Source of the DNA: Callorhinchus milii
Lineage: Eukaryota
Reading direction: 5' to 3'
DNA length: 64,000 nucleotides
Assembly: GCF_018977255.1 (NCBI RefSeq)
Contig: NW_024704765.1
Span: 7,998,001 to 8,062,000 of the forward strand
Below, piece by piece: positions 6,117-34,473 of this stretch. Under the pieces are notes generated by a model. That model made no database searches. It was not told the origin of the DNA and saw only the letters and a list, made by a program, of their open reading frames with translations. The position numbers and the translations under genes are program-made. Each line of letters starts with the position of its first letter. The first letter of the stretch is position 1.

Positions 6117-6625
6117 CTAGTGAACCACACAGCCTGAAGCTTCCCGCTTGATCCTGGCCTTCAGCCTCCTGAGCTCAACGTTGGCCTCGTCCACCACCAT
6201 CCCACTGTCCGCCAGGCGCCAGGCGTCCTCGAAAAGCCCCCGCTCGAAGCTGCTCAGAGCCGCGTGGTGGAAGCGCTGGGACAGGCTAAGCCGGCCCGGC
6301 CTGCGGGCGATGAGGGCCAGAGCCGCCGGCCGGTCCAGGCGCAGAGCCTCCGCGTAGTCCTCGCACGCCTCGCGGTCCGGAGGACGAGGAGCCGGACGTG
6401 GCCCCTGGCACAGTAATCTTCCACTGGCTCGGGGGAGCGACCCTGCTCGATGAGCTGGCTCAGGTCGCCCAGGGCCCTCTCGTACTGCTTCAGCCTGGCC
6501 AGGCACGTCGCCCGTGCACGCACGTACCTCGCCCTGTCGCTGGCCAGCACGGCCAGAGTGTGACACCTCAATGCCTTCTCCTGGCGATTTTCTTTGGCCA
6601 AGGCGTTCGCCTCCTGAGACGCCAC
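6117..6625 (-). CDS. TTC34: TTC34 terminal coding exon with apparent 1-bp frameshift near 6378
   Basis: Acceptor gtttgggtgtggcag|GTG (phase 0); stop TAG at 6119-6117. The 5' part reads VASQEANALAKE...RATCLARLKQYERALGDL...EDYCARGH; the 3' part, in another frame, reads DREACEDYAEAL...LRRLKARIKREASGCVVH*. Length is 509 nt, one short of a multiple of 3. Confidence 0.88.
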
Positions 6626-7574
6626 CTGCCACACCCAAACATACAAGAGAATCAAGTTCACGTTAGTCCGGTCTCCTGCTTGTCCCTCGTCCCCTCCCGC
6701 TCCACTCCTCTCCGCTCTCGGCAGACGCACTTTTAGCCACCACTCCCTCTGAAGCTTTGGAATTCTCTCCCCCTCTCCCCGCACCCCTCCACCGTGCCAA
6801 CCCCTTCCCCTCTTTTAGAACGCGACTGACGACCTTCCTCTTTGTCAGCGCTTACCAGCCGCTGTTAAGCGCTCCGATACACTGCCCCGCACGAAAGGGA
6901 GCGCAAGTTGCTGTTGTGGCTTTCGTGGTTGTTTGAAGGTTACCGCGCTGACTTGTGGGACCTGGGCAGAGGAACGGGAACAATTCCAGATGATTGCCAT
7001 TAAAATGCACCAGGAGTAATGTGTATAGCTCTGGTCACCGTGACATAAAGGGGACATGGGGCCTGCTCAGGCCCTAACAGGCCGTGCAGAGAAGAACGTT
7101 AAGATTGATCACCAGCTTCCCGTTAAGAGGAACAGACTTAAGAACATATTCGAGAGGACCCTGACTAAAACAAAGGGGCTCCGATCTTTTCCAAAAATGG
7201 GCCCCAGTGAAAGTTGCAGCAATTGAGAGTCAATCAGGGTAATTTGGAAACCCCATTAGATATTCCAAGCTTCAAGAAGATATGTTGGCAGAGCTCCCAG
7301 AACTTCCTGGAAGAGTTCCAGTGACAGTGTTTACCCTCTGGCTCTCTCAGTCCCACACATTGCTTTGGTGCAATTTACACGTTCCACGCAGGGCCTCTCC
7401 GTTTGCCTGGCAACCCTACCTTTGCCAATCAAGGACCCAAACTCAGCTGCTCCGCCCCTTACCTGTGGAACTCACTCTCTCCCTCTACCACAGGGCTGCG
7501 AAAAGGTGGAGTGCTCTGCCCAGACGAGTTGAAGAGGTGGACTTAATGGGGAAGCTTATACAGACAGAGAGTTA

Positions 7575-16545: not shown

Positions 16546-16566
16546 CGTTTGACTGTACAAACTTAC

Positions 16567-18042
16567 CCCTCTTTGAAGAAGGCGTTTTGGAACCCTCGCT
16601 CGGCTCCCTGCTCCCCCCTGGCCGTGGGGCTGGCCAGCGGCTGGGAGGCTTTCCCCCGAAGGATCTTCTGCCCTTCCTCTTGGAGCACCTTGAAGAGCAA
16701 ACCTCGGAGGTTCCAGGGCACATAGGACTTGGTCACGAGGGCCGTCTCATCCAGCCGGAGCCGGCAGGCCGTGATGTAGTCCAGCGCGGCGAGATAGTTG
16801 CTGCCGGCCACCATTCGTGTCAGGCCCCGGCCACACAGTGCCTTGACACAGCTGCCGGGGTGGGGAGAGTCGTGTTCCAGCACCGCCTGGAAGTCCTCCA
16901 GGGCCTCGGAGGTCTGGAGGGCCCGCAGGTGGCAGAATCCGCGGAGCGCCAGGATGGTATTGTGGTAGGTTTGCCGGTCGGAGTCCAGGAGTCGCTCGCA
17001 GGCCCGCAGGGATCCGGCGGTGTCACCGGACAGGAGGGCACAGTCGGCCAGTCGGATCTGCAGGTCCCGGTTGTTGTCCGGCTCCAGGCGGAGTACGAGT
17101 CTCAGCACCGGGAGGACCTGTGCCAGGAGCTCGGCCCCGCCCTCGCACCGCAGCTCCACCCTGCACCTCACCGTCTCCCGGTACTCGGAAAAACGCGACT
17201 CTGCGAAACGCTTGGCGTGATCCAAGATGGCGGTCGCGTCCTGGGGCGGGAAGAGCTCCCGAAAGCGCCGCTCGGCCAACCCCGGGGAGACCTCGAAGGC
17301 TGAGGCCAGATCCAACACGGCGTCGCTCTCCCCAGCGCCCGCCGCGTAACGCAAGGCCGCTCGCTCCACCAGGATCTGGGCCGGGGTCCCGGAATTCGAG
17401 GTCTCGGCTTTGCCGGGGTCGGGGCGGGGATGGGGGTCGGGGTGAGGGTGGGGCAGTGCCCTGGGGGCTACTTCCTGCAGGAAGTGTTGGCAGTCGCTCA
17501 GCAGGTGGCTGGGGGTGTCCTGATCTCGGTGATGGTGCGAGACGTAGTCGCAGAAAGCCTCCACGATGCGGGGCAAGTGGTCCCTCTGCCTGGTGGTGAT
17601 GAAGTCCAGGGTCTCCTCTCGCCGATTGGCAAAGGCCTGGAGGTAGTCCACCACCCCGTTCCTGCCGTGTCGCCCGGACAGTACCCAGGCCAACGCCCGG
17701 GTCAGCAGGAGCTGGAGCTGGAGCGAGCGTTCGGGGTGAGCGTTCAGTAGGGCGTTACAGCGTCCGATAGCTTCCTCGTGCCTGCCGCCTCGCACTAGGG
17801 CATCCACCGCCAGCGTCGAGCTCAGGGGCTCATCGGAGAGGAAGACCGCTGCCACCCCTATGTTCACCGGTGGCCCCTGCGAAGCCATCTGGTCCTCGCT
17901 CAGCCCGGACCCCGGCTGGACATTGCCGGGGGAGATTCCAGGGTGACCTCGGGGCCCGACATCCGTCGCCGAGCCCGCCCGCTCGGTTAGTCCTTCCTTC
18001 CACATCCCGGACGCCCCTTCGCCAAGCCTCGGAAATGGAAAT
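16567..18042 (-). CDS. TTC34: TTC34 large 5' coding exon (TPR repeats)
   Basis: Within ORF 16563..18170. Acceptor ...ttatttgcctgtgggtag|ATTT at 18043/18042 with upstream CTAAT and pyrimidine tract; donor GG|GTAAGT at 16567/16566 (phase 2). Peptides GRHEEAIGRCNALL, LTRALAWVLSG, ALRGFCHL, KALCGRGL, DYITACRLR and YVPWNLRGLL match TTC34 as recalled. First in-exon ATG is at 18005; the true start codon is unresolved. Confidence 0.88.
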
Positions 18043-20344
18043 CTACCCACAGGCAAATAAGTCGACGCGGAAGCAGGAAATGGAGAGGCAAACGAGAAGA
18101 TTAGATCTTTATAAATAGTCAGCGTCGTCCTTCGCCTGACGATGGGACAGGAAGAGACTCGCGCCTTCAAACCGCGAGGAAAAACGGCCCACAGGCTCGG
18201 ACGGGGTGGAATTTCAGCCTCCTCGGCCCCGCAGGGTCAAAGACCCGAGCCTCATCCATCGATGGGCCGGACAGGTGTCGCTAGCCATATCTACGGAGTG
18301 AAACCAAAATGAGTTAACATCAACTCGTTTACCTCTCTCCACAGACGCTGCCCGAGCTGCTGTGTACCTGTTCCCAGCGACTTCTGCTTTTATCGGAGAC
18401 TTCCAGCACCTGCAGGATTTCGCCTTTTGTCACTATCGAGCCTGGAGCAGATTTAATTGTCTGCTGCTCTCGAGATCAGTTTCACCCCAGAAAGAGATCT
18501 CCTCCCACAGAGGATCTCCCTCCCTCCCTCCCTCCACAGCAAAAAAACAAAACAAACCCCAGACCTGGAAGGATGAAGGGACCTGGTTGGATTTGAACCC
18601 AGAACCTTCAGCGTCCAGTGCTCACCTCACCTGACCGAGCCACCCCAGAATGTCATGACAACGCAAAAACAGAGACGAACAGTGGTGGGGTGACACCAAA
18701 GGGAACCGGGCGCTGCCCTGTAACTCGGCTCCTGAGCTGAGTGAAGAGGAGATAGAGTGAATAGAGGAGACTGTCGAGAAATGAATCGAACGCGCTGATG
18801 AAATATTCACGACATCTCCCTCGAGGCAGTGAACGCATCGGGCTGGGTGTCTGGCACCCGCAACCCGTCCAGGTGATGAATGCATCCCGGCTGTGTGAGG
18901 TACACACGTGTGCGTGCGTGCGGCGCGCGTGCATGTGTGCGTGTATGTATGTGCGCGCGTTTGTCACGGCTGTGCCTGTATTTGAGTGTGTGTGTGTGTG
19001 TGTGTGGTATAAAGCTGCATTGCCCTATATGAATGTATGCAAGCATGCGTTGGTAAACATGTGCACACACGTGTATGCGTGATTCTCGTTTGCCGACAAA
19101 TACACAGTCACTCCATGTTGACAGTAAATTCTGTAAAGCGCTTTGAGAGGTCCTTCCAATGAGATAAGGCACTGTACCAAATGCAAGGATTATTATTACG
19201 TGTGTGTGTGTGTGTCATACACCCACACAGATACACATGTGCTTCATGTGACATTTCACGCCACTTGGCAAATTGAATATCCATAAAATTGAGAAGAAAA
19301 TGGATCCCTGTGAGGTTCCCTCCCTCTCTTTCCCACAGAGGCAGTCTGTCTCTGGTTAAACAGATGGGAGGGAGCCTGTTCCTCATTTCAGAACCTCAGA
19401 TCAACAGCTTTTCCCAGAGATTAACCTGGAAACTAATCGAAACTGACAAACTGTATGTCCTTATTGCGGTATTTCTTAATAAGAAATCTGAGTTGCATCA
19501 TTATTACATGATACACGTGTGTGTGTGTGTCAAACAAGCACACACATATAATAATAAACCTTGCATTTGGTATATCACATCGAAAGGACGTCTGAAAGCG
19601 CTTCACAGGATTTACTGTTGAATGAAGTTACTGTATTATATCCTACATCCCAAGATATGAGTGGCTCCAGCCCCCCCTCCCCCCCCCACACACACACAAA
19701 CAAACCACACAATACCAGGCACAGATGGCATTACATTATTAATACATTAAAGTGGGTCGCTGGGCGACATTAATCCTTTTTTTTTCAAAAAAAAACTTCC
19801 ACACAGAAATTCCCCCAAATCTTCCAACAGTAAAAGCCAATTTTCCAAATCACCCTCATCCGAACTCAGTTGATAGGACACTAAATTTAACCCTCACCCC
19901 CTCCCTGTCCCGCTGACTCCCAAACTCAAATATTGGGTAGTAACACATAAATAAAATAAAATAAATACCTTAGAAACTTAACAGAAACTTACAATTGTCA
20001 GAGCACTCGGACGCCTTCACTCTCCCGAGTCGCTTCCCCGAGACTCTCACAAGACGTGTCCTGTTTAAGATTATCTTTTTGAGCCCGGGGCCAAATTCCA
20101 GTTCAAGCTCTCTTGTCCCCCTTATTCGTAATAAAGATGCAACCACCGCCCACCCCACCGAATGAAAGCAATCAGCAGCGGGAGGAAGCGGCTCGCTACC
20201 TGTTCCATGTTTGTGAAAGCAAATCCCCTCCTCCCTCTCGAAAACAACACCGAAGCACCCGCCTTGTTGCTGTATTTAACTTCTTATTTATCTTAAATCC
20301 CGAGTTCTGATCCCATGATGAGGAAGCTGTTGTAGGGAGGTTGC

Positions 20345-20638
20345 CCACTTCACACTCACTCACTCACCCACTCACCCACTCATTCACACACTCACTCACC
20401 CACCCACTCATTCACTCTCACACATTCATACACTCACTCACACACTCACACTCGTTCACACACATTCATTCACTCACTCACACCCTCTCTCACACACACA
20501 CACTGGCAGGTTCACTCACACTCATTCTTTCACTCACTCACACTCGTTCACACACATTCACTCACACTCTTTCTCTCTCACACACACACGTTCACACTCA
20601 TTCTTTCACTCATTCACACACTGACTCACTCACTCACC
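20345..20638. repeat. Degenerate (CACT/CATT)n low-complexity array
   Basis: About 290 bp of CACT/CACA/CATT tetramers. Its edge supplies the GTGAGT donor at 20637. Confidence 0.9.
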
Positions 20639-20720: not shown

Positions 20721-20980
20721 CTGTTGCTATAGCTCCACAGAAACACAAGTGGCTTCTCGTTCACCCCATCCATCTCTTTTCTTGTGAACCAAACTCCTTT
20801 TGTTGTGTGTGTGTGTGTGTGTGTGAAAATGAGAGAGAGAGAGACAGTCAGTCAGTGAGGAGGATTTAGTCTCGTTGGGTGATTTAAAGAAGTTGAAGAT
20901 GAATATTTTGTAAAACAAAATCCAGGGACACACACACACACACACACATAGATAGATATATAATAAAAAAATGAACTCAC

Positions 20981-21070: not shown

Positions 21071-21569
21071 CTGAAAGAAAGCCGCAGACACACACACACA
21101 CACAGACAGAATAGCAAGGACGGCTGAAAATCACCCCTTCTCCCAGGCTGTCATTTACTGTCAATTAAAACTGTCCGGTCGTGTCAACCAAATGACGTCA
21201 CCCCCTTTCATCTGGAGCTTGAAAAGCCAAGATCCATTTAAGCGGAGTTTGGATTTGAATATTAAAACCCTCATTTAAACAACCACCCTCACGCTCAATG
21301 CCAACTGAAAGCCACAAACTTGTTGGCGAGATTAAAATGCTTCAATAAATTCTCCCCCAAATATGCACAGAAACACCACTTCACCGCAGATCCCGTGAAG
21401 CACTTTGAGATGTCTCGATGAGGTGATAAGGCGCTACATCAAGTGCATTACGGGTACATTATTAATAATGCATTATCATTATTATAATACAAACAGTCCT
21501 TGAGCTTTGTTTGTTTTGGCGCCCCTTTCAATTCTATTCCAAACGTTTTGTATTGAAACGTCATTCATT

Positions 21570-21575
21570 TTTAAT
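21570..21575 (-). terminator. Candidate polyadenylation signal (ATTAAA) for the B7-like gene
   Basis: Plus-strand tttaat, about 175 nt downstream of the stop. Motif match only. Confidence 0.3.
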
Positions 21576-21750
21576 GCAAAAAAAAACCTCACTGAAATAT
21601 GATACAAAAACAGTGCTCTCATTCGCACAAGGGGGAGAAAGAATATTTTTCCCGTTATTGTTTCTGAACAACCGGGAAAAAAGCAAACTGTACAGTGTTC
21701 CAAATAGATATTTCACACGGATGAATAACCGAGGGCCTGAGACCCACCAT

Positions 21751-23145
21751 TTACTGGTCAACAAAGAATAGGGTCGAACTAGGTTGAACCTCCAGCCAAG
21801 GGTTTGATATGGTACAAGTGAAGTGAGTTCCTTGAGACACTGAAACGGTCAGGTCACTGGAGATATCGAAATGACCGTTTGTCAGCTTGATGGATGTCCT
21901 GGAGTGAGAGGTGACATCTTTATCATTGTTGCTCAGCCAACGGATGCTTCCAAGAGGAAACCCACCTTCCGTGTAGCAGGTGAGCAGTACGTTGCTGTGC
22001 TCCTGAACTTCCGGGTCAGTGGAATACTTGATGGTTGGTTTGCTGTAAGGCGAAGCCACTCGAAGCTCCAGAAAAGCCTCGCCCATCAACTCGTTGCCTT
22101 TCTTGACCCTGCAGATGTAGTCCCCCATGTCATCGATCGAAACGTTCGCCAGCTTCAGGTCTGCTGATCCGCGAAGGAAGTTCTCCCAGGAAAGCGAAGC
22201 TCTCCCTGCGAACATTGGGTCTTGTTCCTCCAAGTGTTGCTTCTCATTCACAAAGGAGTAGGCCAAGCGTTCGGTCATATTGAGGTCCCTGTTCACCCAG
22301 TAAAACCCCAGCTCAGCAATGGTGACCGGGTCATTGCTGGGAATGTCGATATCGCAGATGAGGAGCACACTTTTCCCGCGTATTCCCAGTATATCCTTGA
22401 TTGGGGTCTGCACGGTGATCCCGGGCACAGGGACCACCCAATCCACTAGTAGATTTTCAATGTACTTGTTCCATATGCTACAGGTGTACCTCACCCCTCT
22501 CTTGGCTTTGACCATCACAGAAGTCCTCACCAGGATTTTGTGATCGATTGAGTTTCCCATCATGATGTTGGCCTTGTGGGTGATGTCGTTTCCAGCAGCG
22601 AGCCATTGGACAAGGGGCTTGGGAAACCCTGTGCCTGCCTGGCATGTTATTTGGATGTGGTCCCCTTCCACTGGCTTCTCTGGCTCGAAGCCCATGACAA
22701 TCTTGCTGAATGGGACGCATACAAAGAAGGTGAACGCACGCCGTTTTATCCCGTTCACGTAGCAAATGTATTTGCCCGTGTCTTCGATGGCGGTCGAGTC
22801 AATGTTCAAGATGGAGACGGTGGAGTTGAGAAAGCTGCCATGCAACCTTGGCTTGATCCTTTCGCTCAGGTATTGGACTGTTTCTTCGTTGGGACTGATG
22901 GAGTGGTGGAGAACCCTCTCCATGCCCTCGTTGCCAAAGCTACGCTCCCATTCGATTTCGAAGACTCCTGTAGCTGACTTAACCTGACTGAAATCACAAG
23001 CTGCTTGAAGCTTGCTCCCCTCCAGGATTCCCATGGATGTATCTGCTAATTTTTCAGACCGCCAGTGTGATTTTCCCAATGCCCTGCTTCCCAGGCAGGT
23101 TAACAGATACAAAAAATGCAGATAGGAAAACAGAGGTGGCCTCAT
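21751..23145 (-). CDS. Single-exon B7-family (CD276/HHLA2/butyrophilin-like) protein, 464 aa: signal peptide + IgV-IgC-IgV-IgC, no transmembrane segment
   Basis: Uninterrupted ORF with in-frame TGA 9 codons upstream of the ATG and A at -3. Hydrophobic leader (LFSYLHFLYLLTCLG). Four Ig domains with intact Cys/Trp: AACDF..EW..DTGKYIC; ITCQAGTGFPKPLVQW..YTC; LICD..FYW..DDMGDYICRV; LTCYTEGGFP..IRW..FTCTISNP. Motifs FAGRASL, GSADLKLANVSIDD and ASPYSKPTI are typical of B7 V/C domains. Sequons NST, NMT, NVS. Confidence 0.9.
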   Translation of the reverse strand: MRPPLFSYLHFLYLLTCLGSRALGKSHWRSEKLADTSMGILEGSKLQAACDFSQVKSATGVFEIEWERSFGNEGMERVLHHSISPNEETVQYLSERIKPRLHGSFLNSTVSILNIDSTAIEDTGKYICYVNGIKRRAFTFFVCVPFSKIVMGFEPEKPVEGDHIQITCQAGTGFPKPLVQWLAAGNDITHKANIMMGNSIDHKILVRTSVMVKAKRGVRYTCSIWNKYIENLLVDWVVPVPGITVQTPIKDILGIRGKSVLLICDIDIPSNDPVTIAELGFYWVNRDLNMTERLAYSFVNEKQHLEEQDPMFAGRASLSWENFLRGSADLKLANVSIDDMGDYICRVKKGNELMGEAFLELRVASPYSKPTIKYSTDPEVQEHSNVLLTCYTEGGFPLGSIRWLSNNDKDVTSHSRTSIKLTNGHFDISSDLTVSVSQGTHFTCTISNPWLEVQPSSTLFFVDQ

Positions 23146-23225
23146 ATTCCACCGCGGCAGTTCTACCTTTCACTGATTACTTTCCACCTCTGGAATTTTA
23201 CCATTCAGTAGCTTCCACTGTTGCC
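23146..23225 (-). other. Putative 5' UTR part of the B7-like exon, preceded by a splice acceptor
   Basis: ctatgcttattttcag|GGCAAC at 23226/23225, 80 nt upstream of the ATG, with a TTTGAC branch-like sequence upstream. Contains a short out-of-frame uORF. Confidence 0.5.
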
Positions 23226-25061
23226 CTGAAAATAAGCATAGTTGGGTTTGGGTCAAAAGTCACCTTTTTTTTTGGTGGTGGAGTGGTTGGGGGGGTGGGG
23301 GGAGAGATTTTCCAGTATTGGGTCAAACCACCACAGGAAACAATAATAATTATTTTTGCCCTATTTTCCAGGCAACAACTTTTATTTGCACAGAAATATT
23401 AGCCATGGCCCTCGTAACAGATTTGATGCGATAATTAGATGGAGTCTGTTACAGAATGTCGCGTTTTTCCCCTTCTTGGTTATTGCACTTTGTTGTTCTT
23501 TGATCCCCTTATCGGCCACTCATTCGGATGTCCTTGGCGAGTGTTGGTTGGGTCTGCACGTTGCTTTGATACCCAATTCCAGTCCCTTTCAGAGATGCTA
23601 TCTCCCACTTAAGATCTCTCACCTGACGGAAGAGATCTAGAAGATCGCAGGTTCTGGTGACGGTCACCATTGCGCTGGTCCAGTCAGTACATTGCTTTAC
23701 ACCACATGGAACTGTCATGGACACTGTGAGATCACTGAACAAGATTGTTCCATCACCGAGACCGAGCCTTCCTGTGCTGTGATCTCACAGTGCTTTGGTG
23801 TGGGTCACGGCAGAAATGGCATGGAACCCAGATTAACACACAGCCCAGCTCCAAGCCAGAGCTGCACCCTAGCCAACCTCACCCCACGTGGGACCTAGCT
23901 GAAGCAAATGACCATCACCATAAACCTACAAAAGCATCCACTCATAGCCAACCATTCTCCGCTCAAGCATTTTGAGGCATTTTGTTGTCATTAAGGAACT
24001 GTAAAAAGAACACAGGTTATTCTGAAAATCTGCCCCAAAACAACCGAGCACTTCGGAACTATACCTAAGAAAGTACTACCTTCAACAGACAGGCAAGTCT
24101 GGATATCCGAATAAACATAAATAAAATAAATAAACTGGCTATATATATATAAACAAAGTCTAATTAACAGTAGAATCACGTTTGACATAATTTTGCTAAA
24201 TATGTTTGCTTATAAAGCAGCTTCATCATTCTCAGCAGCGTTGCCAGAGGCAGTGAAGAGAAATGTGCTGAAGTTCTCTCCGAGTGCCATTTGGGTAATT
24301 ACCTCGTTGGGCGCTAAAACAAATGCCACTATTCATAATTGTGATGTTTTGGTATTCGGGCAATAATTAAGTAACCATACGGACTCCAGAGAGAGAAGGA
24401 CCCTCGTGCCTTTCTCTACTCTCTTCCCCCACCAACGCCCCCCCCCCACACCATCACCATCACCTCCGGGGCAATTTGCATGTTAATTATCAGGGTTGCT
24501 GATGGCTTAGAAACAGAGAAACAAGTTATAAACAGCTTTAATTAGCAGCTTAATCATTTTTTTTTACAAGGAACTGCGAGGCACTGTGCTGGATTCATTA
24601 GTATGCGTGCAATTAATTCAGATCGGCTTGGATGCTCATGTTTAGCGCAGAATACAGAACTGAGCTGAGAAGGAGAGACTGAGTAAACACCCCCATCCAC
24701 CTCACAAAGTATTTTGTATTCTCCTTTAAAGACCCAGGAACACAGCACCAGGAAAGGCCATTAGGGCCAGTTCCAAAGTATATATATATATGTATGTTAA
24801 AAAGTCCTCTATTTCTCATTCTTCCTTGAAGTTCTCTGCCTTATTATGTGGCTTGTATTTTACTGCTACGATCTGCTTCTCTGGGTTGCCCATTCACAGA
24901 TTGGTGCTGCGTTGTGGGCAAACTCAGGGTCCTTTAACCTCAAGACTCCTAAATCTGAATCACGCCCCTACTGATGAGGTGGGAATTGGCATGCGGAATT
25001 GGGGCAGTCTTAATCCAGCTCTCCTATTGAGCAAACCTCGACAGAAGCAAAACAAACTGCC

Positions 25062-25533: not shown

Positions 25534-28500
25534 TAAAGGCTTTTGTGTCAGTGACAGAAAGTGCGCAGCAGAGGGCGATGGTACACTGAGATTGGGAACG
25601 AGTTTCGCACGAGTCCTTATTCCTGGACAAGGGCTTGGGGTTCACATCAGCTCAGACGCAACACAGGTCGAGAGAAAGGCAGCTATTACCGCAGTTAGTG
25701 GTAATTTCTTTTAAATGTTAATGGGTTTACCAAGGTTTTCGGAATACATTCGTGCTATTCACTTCACCCTCGGTAATTGGCACACGGACTCAATCGCACA
25801 GCTATTGACTCATTTGAAGATAATTTTACTCCGAGACACTTCTGCAAGAACTTTACTTTGGGATTGCAATCATATAGAGAAATAAGTGCTTTAAAGTCGG
25901 CCTTACCTCCCCCTCTGGGATAATACTAACAATCCTTGCATTGCCCTTTTCATGTCAGGAGCATGTGTCAAAGTGCTTCGCATGTGCGGTGACTCTATAT
26001 CTGTAGATGATCTTAATAGCTAATTTGCACACAGTGATGTCTCCACAAAACATAGCCACATAAAGAGAGAATAATTTTAGGGAAGAGAAGAGGTGAGAAA
26101 CCAGTAGGGTTCACACAATTCAGTGACACCCACCCTTATCCACTCCTCCCTCTCTTGTGGTCAGAAATTCCAACTAATCTTAGGCTTCCGACCGTTGTGT
26201 TTCAGGTTTTACGATTAAATGCAACTCTCAGCTGTGGAGGCTGAATTCAGGGAACGTTTCCAGAGACCAGCATTGAGCACAGTTCAGAGCAGAAGAAATT
26301 CCGAGCGAGCCGAGCGGAATCGCAACAGGATTCCTCACTAAGGAATCCCACAAGTTGAACCTCGTTGTTGGCAATTTTTGAGGCAGCAATGAGCAAACTG
26401 CCGATGGGCCAGATGGGCTGTTTTGGGCTGTATCATCCGATGTAATAAATAAATGATAAGTGTTTTTTCTTAGAAAGCACATTGTTTAATTTAAAACCCA
26501 AAGCACAGGACTTACATCATTATATTAGTTGTCGGATACAGTGTAGTGCGTCCACATTGTGAGGCTTTCTATGTTTTTCATTACTGCATAATACCATAAT
26601 ACTTCAGTGCAAATTAATCTTCAACACGTGTTCCTCATAAATGCCTATAAATCCTTGGCTAATAGATTACTCACTTTGAAGAGTTCAAACTCTGCTGACG
26701 GAAAGGGATGTCACTGTGTTTCTCTTTCCCGAACGCCCAATATTCCAGAATCCTGGATTTCCCCCCTTTTAATTAAAACAGAGATGGGAGGGACCTCCAT
26801 GNTTTTTTACACACATACACCATATATCTATATAAAGGTTGTTCACTTTATGGCTGTTTGCAGGATGTTGCTCTAAGCAAACCATTTTTTCTACATGGTC
26901 AATACCCATCACACTAAAGATCAGTGAAGCGCTTTGAAACATGTCTGTAACGGGATAAGGCGCTGCATCAAATGCAAGGAATATTGTTTTTTTTCCCCAG
27001 ATCCAAGTTACAGAAACATTTAAGTGGAGACATGGCTCAATTGACACCAAACTCTCTAGCCGTGGTGGCCCACCTATTTGGTCGACCAACAAAATACATT
27101 TTCTTGATTGAATATCTCTCAAATTATGTCGTTAATCAAGAAAATATTCAATCAAGGAAAAAATTTGGAAACAAAACATTGATTTGAAACAGATTCACCT
27201 AGACTTGTGCGAATGTTAGGCTCTGGCCCATGGCCATGGGTTGGCCACCACCGCTCCATAGCCTGCCTTGAATTATCTGAAGCTACATAGAACCTTACAG
27301 CGTGGAAACAAGTCAATCTGTCCAACTAGTCAGGTCTGGTGTTTATACTCTGCATAAGCCTCCACCCCTCTATTCCCCTCTACTCCCTTTCCCCTCATTT
27401 CGCCCACAAAATATAGCCAATTCACTTTACAGTGTATTCTGTGAAGCGCTTTGAGACGTCGCGAAGACGTGACAAGGCGCTATATCAAATGCGAGGATTA
27501 TTATTGTTATAATTATGTATCAAGCTTCCTCTTGAATACGTTGACGCTTTCTGCTTTATGGAAAGGTGCGTCACACTCTCACCGTCCTCTGCGTGAAGAA
27601 GTTCCTTACTGAACTCCCTCGCGAGTCTGAAGTTTGTTATTCTGGTATTATTTCCCCAATCCCATTTAGTGCCTCACATTGCTTGACAAATGGCACTTCT
27701 ACAGGAAACAAAACTGTTGAACGGGGTTTATTAATGTTGGTGGCTGACTGTGCTTCGTATCAATACACTGCATTAAACCGCTTGACTATCAATCTGACAT
27801 CAATCGAGTGAACATTCAATTAGTCCTGCGTCCCTTTATTATATAAAAAAATCAGGCAAATAAGGATTTTTTTGGGGGGGGGATTAAATAAATTCATTCC
27901 AGCGTTTAATGAGCACCAACTATAAGGCAATGGAGTGGAGAGAGTAATTTAATTTTTTCATTAAATAGAATTATAGTTACTTACTGGAGGCTACGGCACA
28001 GTTAATTGAAAGGAAACTATTTTGTCTTAATTTACTTCCGTAGTTATGAATTACAGTTTGCCAGGCAGAAATGTATTTTTGAAAGAAAGGGGGGGGGGGG
28101 GTCGAAAGGAGAAAATTGTTGAAAATTATACTTTAAATTCCCTCCCCTCCCCCTGTCTGATATAAATATTAATAACGACAATCCTTGCATTTGATATGGC
28201 TCCTTATCGTGTTGTTGGAATTCTCAAATTGCCTGGTAGAGGTTCCTTGAGAGGTGTAGTGACTGTGTAATTAAAGGGAAGCTCTGTTGACCGGACTGAG
28301 AGGTTCCAGGTCCTGCATTAAGTAGATCTCATTACCCCACTTTGCTTGGGAAATTCCATGTGTAGTTGGGACACCTATGACATTGAACTCGCAAGGTTAG
28401 GCTGATGCTTCAGAGCGCTGCTGAGGGGTGGGGGAATGTTATCCTTCGAATGAGATGTGAAACCAAGGACCCATCTGTGCCCTGTTCAAGTGGACAACAT

Positions 28501-34260: not shown

Positions 34261-34473
34261 NNNNNNNNNNNNNNNNNNNNNNNNNNNNNNNNNNNNNNNN
34301 NNNNNNNNNNNNNNNNNNNNNNNNNNNNNNNNNNNNNNNNNNNNNNNNNNNNNNNNNNNNNNNNNNNNNNNNNNNNNNNNNNNNNNNNNNNNNNNNNNNN
34401 NNNNNNNNNNNNNNNNNNNNNNNNNNNNNNNNNNNNNNNNNNNNNNNNNNNNNNNNNNNNNNNNNNNNNNNNN
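34261..34473. other. Assembly gap (213 N)
   Basis: Run of N characters. Confidence 1.

What the first reader, a model, noticed from the sequence alone, without database searches (positions are those of the whole stretch)
21751..23145. Intronless, apparently secreted four-Ig B7-family gene
Seen: one 1,395-nt ORF carries the leader and all four Ig domains (V-C-V-C), with every canonical Cys/Trp intact, and stops right after the last domain (..SSTLFFVDQ*) with no TM or cytoplasmic tail. An ATTAAA follows about 175 nt later. Established: B7/butyrophilin genes normally encode leader, each Ig domain and TM in separate exons and are type-I membrane proteins. Inference: a retroposed or otherwise intron-free B7 copy kept intact by selection, encoding a soluble co-signalling ligand or decoy in an early-diverging jawed vertebrate.
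Basis: partly seen in the sequence, partly recalled or inferred. Interest (0 to 1): 0.78.

Follow-up and report, generated by a model that had tools for sequence, protein, structure and literature searches.

The report
Ancient secreted four-Ig B7-like gene
This elephant-shark gene encodes, in one uninterrupted coding exon, a four-domain relative of the B7 immune ligands that has no membrane anchor; the same gene is kept in sharks, rays, sturgeons, paddlefish and coelacanth, was not found in teleosts or tetrapods, and I found no paper describing it.

Summary
Window 21751-23145 (-) is an intact 464-codon ORF with a leader and V-C-V-C Ig domains. All canonical Cys/Trp are present, there is no TM or GPI-type tail, and one ATTAAA lies 176 nt after the stop.

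It is not a recent retrocopy or a species oddity. Orthologues in sharks, rays, sturgeon/paddlefish and coelacanth end at the same residue. In all six loci I could read, the CDS is a single exon. dN/dS among elasmobranchs is 0.22-0.36.

The stop codon and a 3'UTR block just after it are conserved.

"Intronless" needs qualifying. A splice acceptor 80 nt upstream of the ATG is conserved in all five cartilaginous fishes, which suggests a non-coding first exon.

The closest named relative is CD276 (B7-H3), but the gene is a separate paralogue. Sharks and sturgeons carry a true CD276 as well. The two V-C halves are only 27% identical, unlike the recent mammalian 4Ig duplication.

Best reading: an old, selectively maintained, natively secreted B7-family protein. 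The ligand/decoy function is inferred, and no receptor or expression data were available. Databases name it automatically; I found no paper describing it.

The parts
21751..23145 (-). Complete coding sequence (464 codons plus TAA) of the secreted V-C-V-C B7-like protein, in one exon
   Evidence: ORF list and sequence. Orthologous CDSs in five other genomes are also single uninterrupted ranges of exactly 3 x (aa+1) nt.
23074..23145 (-). Start codon and predicted signal peptide (residues 1 to about 24, MRPPLFSYLHFLYLLTCLGSRALG)
   Evidence: Hydrophobic core FLYLLTCLG, KD9 2.0. AF2 helix at residues 5-19. The MRxL start is conserved in all chondrichthyans. An in-frame TGA lies 9 codons upstream. 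The cleavage site is inferred from the -3/-1 rule; no predictor was run.
22711..23034 (-). IgV domain 1 (residues 38-145; C50, W66, DTGKYIC128)
   Evidence: Pfam V-set and I-set hits. AF2 beta sandwich. Invariant columns.
22462..22710 (-). IgC domain 1 (residues 146-228; C168, W181, C222). Unpaired C143 sits at the V1-C1 junction in chondrichthyans only
   Evidence: Pfam I-set, C2-set_3 and Ig_3 hits; alignment; cysteine list.
22399..22461 (-). C1-V2 junction (residues 229-249, IENLLVDWVVPVPG...), the most conserved stretch of the protein
   Evidence: Mean pairwise identity is 0.65 over all 9 sequences and 0.79 among chondrichthyans, the highest of any segment. AF2 confidence is low here.
22054..22398 (-). 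IgV domain 2 (residues 250-364; C264, W283, DMGDYIC345)
   Evidence: Pfam V-set 252-363; aligns to the CD276 V domain.
21781..22053 (-). IgC domain 2 (residues 365-455; C390, W403, C444)
   Evidence: Pfam Ig_3, C2-set_3, C2-set_2 and C1-set hits at 369-456; aligns to the CD276 C domain.
21751..21780 (-). Nine-residue C-terminal tail (SSTLFFVDQ) and the TAA stop, whose position is conserved
   Evidence: All orthologues end within 0-2 residues of this point. The last 19 residues score KD 0.07.
23226..23240 (-). Conserved polypyrimidine tract plus AG splice acceptor (tatgcttattttcag|G); exon 2 would begin at 23225
   Evidence: CAACTATGYTTATTTNCAG|G aligns in all five chondrichthyans, about 80 nt upstream of the ATG. 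It is absent in paddlefish. No RNA evidence.
23146..23225 (-). 5'UTR part of the coding exon, conserved at the nucleotide level but not as a reading frame
   Evidence: Alignment. In-frame stops upstream of the ATG in C. milii and Rhinoraja.
23621..23800 (-). Second conserved upstream block, ending in a candidate donor CAG|GTGAGA (exon end 23623, GT at 23622-23621). Putative promoter and non-coding exon 1
   Evidence: The block aligns with Chiloscyllium, Narcine and Scyliorhinus. Narcine has the same CAG|GTGAGA and Chiloscyllium has GTAAGT nearby. The Ensembl-derived model A0A4W3GWH5 uses exactly this donor. This is an inference.
21681..21718 (-). Conserved 3'UTR block starting about 33 nt after the stop (GTGTGAAATATCTATTTGGAACACTGTACAGTTTGCTT)
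   Evidence: Aligns with TGTGGAATATGTGTTTGGAAAAAATATTGTATGGTTTGTT in sharks and rays.
21570..21575 (-). ATTAAA poly(A) signal, 176 nt after the stop
   Evidence: It is the only AATAAA/ATTAAA within 1.5 kb downstream.
24285..24642 (-). Conserved non-coding element linked to the gene, rich in TAATTA motifs and carrying an ATGCAAAT octamer. A possible enhancer; whether it belongs to this gene is uncertain
   Evidence: About 70% identical over 358 nt to Chiloscyllium, Narcine and Scyliorhinus, where it lies 5.7-8.8 kb upstream of the gene. It is 85% identical over 747 nt between shark and ray. It is inverted and about 1 kb downstream of the gene in paddlefish and sterlet. No Rfam match.

Best explanation
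The locus is a functional, ancient gene of Callorhinchus milii for a natively secreted member of the B7/butyrophilin family.

Shown:
- One exon carries the full 464-codon CDS: leader, IgV1, IgC1, IgV2, IgC2 and a 9-residue tail.
- There is no TM, no GPI-type tail and no cytoplasmic region.
- The same architecture, the same stop position and the same single-exon CDS occur in sharks, rays, paddlefish and sterlet. The same protein ending occurs in coelacanth.
- The gene evolves under purifying selection.
- It is a paralogue of CD276, not its orthologue.

Inferred:
- Transcription starts at a non-coding exon 1 about 0.5 kb upstream.
- A roughly 400-nt 5'UTR intron is spliced to the conserved acceptor at 23226.
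- The mRNA ends after the ATTAAA at 21575.
- The leader is cleaved at about residue 24, and the protein is N-glycosylated (N107 is widely conserved) and released.
- It acts as a diffusible ligand or decoy with two V domains, engaging an unidentified IgSF receptor of the CD28-like kind.
- The all-at-once absence of domain-boundary introns is best explained by retroposition of a spliced mRNA before the cartilaginous/bony fish split, followed by recruitment of a 5' exon.
For: - The ORF and its domains.
- Organism and orthologues: Callorhinchus (P0002), Pristiophorus, Scyliorhinus, Chiloscyllium, Narcine and Rhinoraja at 47-56% identity; the paddlefish/sturgeon cluster at 38% and coelacanth at 40%.
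- All proteins end at the same alignment position.
- The CDS is a single exon in Chiloscyllium, Rhinoraja, Narcine, Scyliorhinus, Polyodon and Acipenser ruthenus.
- dN/dS is 0.22-0.36 where dS is not saturated.
- All four domains are similarly conserved.
- Sturgeons keep two copies.
- No TM-grade hydrophobic window exists in any orthologue apart from the paddlefish leader and a V1 beta-strand stretch in Rhinoraja.
- No credible TM-coding ORF lies between the stop and the next gene; the only hits are CVCVCV microsatellite translations.
- No conserved exon lies downstream.
- The fold is four beta sandwiches, and the best PDB match is human 4Ig B7-H3 (9ly6_A, E 9.5e-25), followed by PD-L1, ICOS-L and BTN3A1.
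- In the tree, the N-halves (100/100) and C-halves (100/97) are each monophyletic across species and sit outside the CD276 and BTN/BTNL2 clades. True CD276 coexists in Scyliorhinus, Chiloscyllium and Acipenser.
Against: - No transcript, expression or protein data could be consulted for any species. Secretion, the 5'UTR intron and the poly(A) site are therefore predictions.
- The leader is only moderately hydrophobic (KD15 1.55) and no signal-peptide predictor was available.
- The only Callorhinchus database model (A0A4W3GWH5) is a differently spliced 322-aa fragment.
- The tree branch separating the family from other B7s is weak (74/53), and a sister relation to CD276 is not rejected (p-AU 0.27-0.29).
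- No receptor is known. None of the orphan CD28-family receptors described in PMC11599192 has the same species distribution.
- A tightly linked homeobox-type conserved element hints at a possibly non-immune regulation.
Confidence: 0.62

Rival explanations
1. It is a normal type-I membrane B7. The ORF's stop is bypassed by splicing from the CA|GTAAAT site, or another donor, to a downstream TM and cytoplasmic exon.
For: A GTAAAT string overlaps the stop codon. The Ensembl-derived model A0A4W3GWH5 joins part of the ORF to downstream pieces at about 21403 and 21316, which encode a partly hydrophobic tail, VLHGICGEVVFLFCGFQLALSVRVVV.
Against: - The donor is absent from all five other species, whereas the stop codon position is conserved.
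- It would be a phase-2 donor, whereas Ig-domain exons in this family use phase 1 (established knowledge).
- The 3'UTR immediately after the stop is conserved.
- No downstream block is conserved with any orthologous locus.
- The only hydrophobic ORFs before the next gene come from a TG/CA microsatellite.
- The Ensembl tail needs two GC-AG introns, removes C2 and the leader, contains E and R, and is not conserved.
- Independent gene models in at least 8 species all stop at the same place.
Confidence: 0.04
2. It is a recent processed pseudogene or a lineage-specific retrocopy that happens still to be open.
For: The CDS has none of the domain-boundary introns typical of B7 genes.
Against: - Intact orthologues with the same architecture occur in lineages that split more than 400 My ago.
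- dN/dS is 0.22-0.36.
- The 5'UTR acceptor, the 3'UTR and a linked non-coding element are conserved.
- Both copies are retained in sturgeons.
Confidence: 0.01
3. It is a secreted IgSF protein whose role is not lymphocyte co-signalling, for example developmental, neural or matrix adhesion/guidance. Its resemblance to B7 would then reflect only shared V-C ancestry.
For: - A 360-750 nt conserved non-coding element full of TAATTA homeodomain-type motifs has stayed within 1-9 kb of the gene from chimaera to sturgeon despite an inversion.
- The N-terminal half also scores against DSCAM, neurofascin, DIP and NEGR1 Ig domains.
- No immune-gene neighbours were seen. The neighbours are a TPR gene in the window and mitofusin in sturgeon and paddlefish.
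Against: - The best sequence and fold matches for both halves are B7-H3, then PD-L1, BTN and ICOS-L.
- The V-C tandem unit with B7-type C domains (Pfam C2-set_3 and C2-set_2, the CD80-like type) is the family signature.
- The conserved element may serve another gene.
- The element also contains an ATGCAAAT octamer, which is compatible with lymphoid expression.
Confidence: 0.2
4. The protein is made without its own anchor but works at the cell surface. It would be tethered by a disulphide (unpaired C143) or by non-covalent pairing to a membrane B7/butyrophilin-like or other partner.
For: - There is an extra cysteine at the V1-C1 junction in all six chondrichthyan sequences.
- Butyrophilins are known to act as hetero-oligomers, as in the BTN2A1-BTN3A1-BTN3A2 structures among the fold hits.
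- The C1-V2 junction is extremely conserved, which suggests an interaction surface.
Against: C143 is not conserved in paddlefish, sturgeon or coelacanth (D, D and T at that column), so it cannot be essential to the family's function. No partner was identified.
Confidence: 0.1

Closest known systems
CD276 / B7-H3 (including the mammalian 4Ig isoform)
   Same: CD276 is the best sequence match for both halves of the protein (PDB 9ly6/9ly5, E 1e-38 for the whole protein and 6e-15 for the N-half) and the best fold match. The mammalian isoform has the same V-C-V-C order. A sister relationship is not rejected (p-AU 0.27-0.29).
   Different: - It is not the orthologue. Catshark, bamboo shark and sturgeon have a separate 2-Ig, TM-bearing CD276 that groups with tetrapod CD276.
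- Mammalian 4Ig arose by a recent tandem exon duplication with near-identical halves (PMC3172298; the halves are identical). Here the halves are 27% identical, and each half is orthologous across species.
- CD276 is multi-exonic and type-I membrane-bound, and PMC3172298 reports its soluble form as shed from the 2Ig isoform. This gene has no anchor encoded at all.
BTNL2 (butyrophilin-like 2)
   Same: It shares the V-C-V-C ectodomain architecture, and NCBI's automatic name for several orthologues is 'butyrophilin-like protein 2'.
   Different: BTNL2 sequences from mammals and teleosts fall in a well-supported butyrophilin clade (100/96) away from this family. Their two halves are recent duplicates of each other. 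BTNL2 also has a TM segment and a multi-exon structure (established knowledge).
Soluble B7-H3
   Same: The end product is the same kind of thing: a free B7 ectodomain in body fluids that could engage or block a receptor.
   Different: PMC3172298 reports that soluble B7-H3 is shed from membrane-bound 2Ig B7-H3, so it is a by-product of a membrane-protein gene. Here the germline gene encodes only the soluble form, and has done so since before the cartilaginous/bony fish split.
Retrogenes that recruited a 5' exon
   Same: The complete CDS is in one exon, while relatives have one intron per domain. There is a probable non-coding upstream exon with a 5'UTR intron.
   Different: No parent gene, poly(A) relic or target-site duplication can be identified at this age. 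The origin therefore remains inferred rather than shown.

Membership tests
B7 / butyrophilin superfamily (broad sense) | Ectodomain built of an N-terminal IgV followed by an IgC domain of the CD80/BTN type | tested here: met
   Two V-set and two C2-set_3/C2-set_2/C1-set stretches are above Pfam cut-offs. PDB sequence hits are CD276, PD-L1, BTN3A1, BTNL8, BTN1A1 and ICOS-L. Foldseek hits are 4Ig B7-H3, PD-L1, ICOS-L and BTN.
B7 / butyrophilin superfamily (broad sense) | Type-I membrane protein with a TM segment after the last Ig domain | tested here: not met
   No hydrophobic segment follows C2, and the protein ends 9 residues after the domain in all orthologues. No TM exon lies downstream.
B7 / butyrophilin superfamily (broad sense) | Leader, each Ig domain and TM on separate exons (phase-1 introns) | tested here: not met
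   The CDS is one uninterrupted range in the window and in six loci of other species.
B7 / butyrophilin superfamily (broad sense) | Binds a CD28-family or other IgSF receptor on lymphocytes | not testable with these tools
   No binding or expression data were available. The orphan receptors described in PMC11599192 do not share its species distribution.
CD276 (B7-H3) orthologous group | Falls inside the CD276 clade and is the only CD276-like gene of the species | tested here: not met
   Both halves lie outside the CD276 clade. Scyliorhinus, Chiloscyllium and Acipenser have a distinct CD276 as well. A sister position is not rejected.
Mammalian-type 4Ig B7-H3 | V-C-V-C produced by a recent tandem duplication with near-identical halves | tested here: not met
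   The halves are 27% identical over 124 residues. The N-halves and C-halves each form cross-species clades.
BTNL2 | Groups with butyrophilins in phylogeny | tested here: not met
   The BTNL2-named sequences form a separate clade with 100/96 support.
Processed retrogene | Intron-free copy of a multi-exon parent | tested here: inconclusive
   The CDS is intron-free and the relatives are multi-exonic (established knowledge). No parent gene is visible in the window, and the rest of the genome could not be searched.
Processed retrogene | Poly(A) remnant and target-site duplications at the insertion | tested here: inconclusive
   None is evident in Callorhinchus. An A-run follows the stop in paddlefish and sterlet only. 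After more than 400 My, absence carries no information.
Functional protein-coding gene (versus pseudogene) | Open frame in distant orthologues with dN/dS well below 1 | tested here: met
   Eight or more intact orthologues; dN/dS 0.22-0.36.

The most novel reading that the evidence does not exclude
[quoted passage not shown] Its two deeply diverged V-C modules would let it bridge or block two different receptors. It and its receptor were lost together in teleosts and tetrapods. That would make cartilaginous fish, sturgeons and coelacanth the only animals in which this arm of co-signalling can be studied.
Probability: 0.15. Interest if true: 0.75.

Novelty: new variant of a known kind. Interest (0 to 1): 0.55.

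Why it matters
All characterised B7/butyrophilin ligands are membrane proteins that signal at cell contacts. Their soluble forms are by-products of shedding or splicing. A B7 paralogue that has encoded only a secreted V-C-V-C protein for more than 400 million years would show that diffusible B7-type signalling or decoying was part of the original jawed-vertebrate repertoire.

It would also add a new orphan ligand to set beside the orphan CD28-family receptors recently found in the same slowly evolving lineages.

Finally, it is a clean example of a very old gene with an intron-free CDS in a family that otherwise has one exon per domain. It is also a caution for annotation, because current names (CD276-like, BTNL2) mislabel it.

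Tried and rejected
1. Profile search with the family alignment in the word-indexed database returned only the seven proteins already known. It did not even return members of the alignment itself, so it added nothing.
2. The coelacanth locus could not be fetched, so the single-exon state is unverified there.
3. Exact look-up of the 464-aa Callorhinchus protein found no contig, so no transcript evidence was obtained.
4. A Logan contig for a sturgeon orthologue is colinear with the genome over its whole length. It therefore says nothing about splicing.
5. Synteny between Callorhinchus and paddlefish: no shared flanking genes within the stretches held. Only the non-coding element is shared.
6. Ten other long ORFs of the window gave no Pfam hit.
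7. Rfam gave nothing for the conserved element. The only match was a sub-threshold mir-466 hit in a CA-type repeat, which I took as a repeat artefact.
8. Matching the gene's species distribution to one of the orphan CD28-family receptors found no match.
9. Five literature searches found no description of this family. Flajnik et al. 2012 on B7 evolution is not held in the library, so prior mention there cannot be excluded.
10. I considered reading the in-frame peptide upstream of the ATG seen in some shark models (GEWW..VVDRI..) as coding. I rejected this because Callorhinchus and Rhinoraja have in-frame stops there.
Full report
**Observation**

The window holds a 1,395-nt ORF at 21751..23145 on the minus strand (464 aa, stop TAA). 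Pfam finds two V-set and two C-type Ig stretches above their cut-offs. The four disulphide pairs are C50-C128, C168-C222, C264-C345 and C390-C444, and the core tryptophans are all present.

The protein stops nine residues after the last domain. No 19-residue window reaches transmembrane-grade hydrophobicity, and the C-terminal 19 residues score 0.07. The N-terminus (MRPPLFSYLHFLYLLTCLGSRALG) has a modest hydrophobic core and is modelled as a helix at residues 5-19. An ATTAAA at 21575-21570, 176 nt after the stop, is the only canonical poly(A) signal within 1.5 kb.

**Whose gene it is and who else has it**

A database fragment identical to part of the ORF comes from Callorhinchus milii (UniProt A0A4W3GWH5). 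Full-length relatives at 47-56% identity occur in three sharks (Pristiophorus, Scyliorhinus, Chiloscyllium), an electric ray (Narcine) and a skate (Rhinoraja).

An exhaustive HMMER scan of 1.84 billion representatives added only two more full-length groups. One is a 463-aa protein of paddlefish and sturgeons (E 2e-94, 38% identity). The other is a coelacanth protein (E 1e-70, 40% identity).

Every other hit is either a multi-Ig giant or an ordinary B7/butyrophilin at E > 1e-40. No separate teleost or tetrapod representative appears. A search seeded with the coelacanth protein recovered only itself and sharks. Sturgeons keep two copies.

**Architecture is conserved**

All these proteins align end to end and terminate within 0-2 residues of the same column, with no TM segment. 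In Chiloscyllium, Rhinoraja, Narcine, Scyliorhinus, Polyodon and Acipenser ruthenus the annotated gene range equals exactly 3 x (aa+1) nt, so the CDS is a single exon. The coelacanth locus could not be fetched.

Among elasmobranchs, where dS is not saturated, dN/dS is 0.22-0.36. The four domains are about equally conserved. The C1-V2 junction (CSIWNKYIENLLVDWVLPLPG) is the most conserved stretch.

This rules out a recent processed pseudogene. It dates the intron-free, anchor-less architecture to before the split of cartilaginous and bony fishes.

**Is the stop real?**

- That string is not present in any orthologue, whereas the stop position is conserved.
- It would be a phase-2 donor, unlike the phase-1 boundaries of Ig exons (established knowledge).
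- A 3'UTR block about 33 nt after the stop is conserved from chimaera to sharks and rays. In elasmobranchs it is followed by ATTAAA/AATAAA-type motifs.
- Nothing downstream is conserved with any orthologous locus.
- Between the stop and the next gene, the only hydrophobic reading frames are translations of a TG/CA microsatellite.

The one dissenting model is the Ensembl-derived A0A4W3GWH5. It lacks a start codon, removes the leader, most of V1 and all of C2, needs two GC-AG introns, and ends in a non-conserved tail. I regard it as an artefact.

**Not quite intronless**

About 80 nt upstream of the ATG, a polypyrimidine tract plus CAG|G (window 23240-23226) aligns in all five cartilaginous fishes. 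The sequence between it and the ATG is conserved as nucleotides but not as a reading frame. Callorhinchus and Rhinoraja both have in-frame stops there, which also fixes the ATG at 23145 as the start.

A second conserved block lies at about 23800-23650 and ends in CAG|GTGAGA (exon end 23623). Narcine has the same motif and Chiloscyllium has GTAAGT. The Ensembl model uses exactly this donor.

The likely structure is therefore a non-coding exon 1, a roughly 400-nt intron in the 5'UTR, and one exon with the whole CDS and 3'UTR. This is an inference, because no RNA data were available. Paddlefish and sterlet lack the acceptor motif.

**Family placement**

The best PDB sequence matches for the whole protein and for each half are CD276/B7-H3, followed by PD-L1, BTN3A, BTNL8, BTN1A1 and ICOS-L. 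An AlphaFold model (pLDDT 75, four beta sandwiches) matches human 4Ig B7-H3 best, then PD-L1, ICOS-L and BTNs.

In a tree of 66 V-C units, the family's N-halves (100/100) and C-halves (100/97) each form a cross-species clade. They lie outside the CD276 clade and the butyrophilin/BTNL2 clade. That CD276 clade includes catshark, bamboo shark, sturgeon, arowana, frog, bird and mammal sequences. Because Scyliorhinus, Chiloscyllium and Acipenser have both genes, this is a paralogue.

The separating branch is weak (74/53), and an AU test does not reject a sister relation to CD276 (p 0.27-0.29).

The two halves are only 27% identical. In every other four-Ig protein in the tree, including mammalian 4Ig B7-H3, the halves are each other's nearest relatives. 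That pattern is consistent with recent exon duplication (PMC3172298). The V-C-V-C layout here is therefore ancient.

**Mechanism**

Shown: a conserved, selected gene for a leader plus four Ig domains and nothing else.

Inferred: secretion, N-glycosylation (N107 is widely conserved), and action as a diffusible B7-type ligand or decoy with two distinct V modules.

Rivals:
- A non-immune secreted IgSF role. This is suggested by a tightly linked conserved non-coding element of homeobox type.
- Surface tethering through a partner. The unpaired C143 could serve this, but it is chondrichthyan-only.

Orphan CD28-family receptors retained in the same slowly evolving lineages exist (PMC11599192). None has the same species distribution.

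**Novelty**

Public databases hold automatic models named 'CD276 antigen-like', 'butyrophilin-like protein 2' or 'uncharacterized LOC102356954'. Five full-text searches found no paper that describes the family. One key review is not held in the library, so an earlier mention there cannot be excluded.

I rate it a new variant of a known kind: a B7-family paralogue that is natively secreted and has an intron-free CDS.

Noticed in passing
window 24285-24642 (also L001:965-1709, L003:3898-4632, L004:3083-3385, L005:12228-12399, L007:12174-12215): This is a conserved non-coding element. It is about 70% identical between chimaera and elasmobranchs and 85% identical over 747 nt between shark and ray, which is higher than the neighbouring coding sequence. 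It is rich in TAATTA motifs and contains an ATGCAAAT octamer. It lies upstream of the B7-like gene in cartilaginous fishes, but inverted and about 1 kb downstream of it in paddlefish and sterlet. There is no Rfam match. It is probably an enhancer; its target gene is unknown.
   Followed up: partly
window 16563-18170 (-), with further pieces at 6257-6784 (-): A neighbouring gene with tetratricopeptide repeats lies on the same strand. Its 535-aa open first exon sits in a GC-rich stretch (GC 0.65 at 16-18 kb), about 3.5 kb downstream of the B7-like stop. Its identity was not established; TTC34-like is only a guess from memory.
   Followed up: partly
L005:1-6789 and L007:1-6858: In paddlefish and sterlet, the gene immediately upstream on the same strand is a mitofusin (Dynamin_N plus Fzo_mitofusin). 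No mitofusin exon was found in the 41 kb upstream in the Callorhinchus window.
   Followed up: partly
window 21275-21405, 22098-22855 and 23617-23757 (-): The UniProt/Ensembl model A0A4W3GWH5 for this locus is a 322-aa fragment. It skips the start codon, the leader, most of V1 and all of C2. It needs two GC-AG introns. It appears to be a mis-annotation of a single-coding-exon gene.
   Followed up: yes
window 22717-22719 (-), residue C143: There is an extra, apparently unpaired cysteine at the V1-C1 junction (FVC[VI]PF). It is present in all six cartilaginous-fish sequences and replaced by D or T in sturgeon, paddlefish and coelacanth. It is a possible site for a disulphide dimer or a tether.
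   Followed up: partly
window 20351-20637, and on to about 21130: A long, degenerate CACT/CA-type microsatellite lies between the B7-like gene and the TPR gene. It produces spurious 'TH' and 'CVCV' ORFs and a sub-threshold mir-466 Rfam hit (20804-20948, E 0.018).
   Followed up: yes
L005:11393-11430 and L007:11393-11420: In paddlefish and sterlet, an A-run of about 20 nt begins roughly 10 nt after the stop codon. It is absent in cartilaginous fishes. It is probably a simple repeat rather than a retroposition relic.
   Followed up: no
window 34261-34473 (also single N at 26802 and 28685): This is an assembly gap or masked stretch.
   Followed up: no
P0157/P0158, P0159/P0161, P0163/P0164: Each sturgeon species examined carries two full-length copies of the gene on different chromosomes. 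This fits retention of both copies after the sturgeon genome duplication.
   Followed up: no
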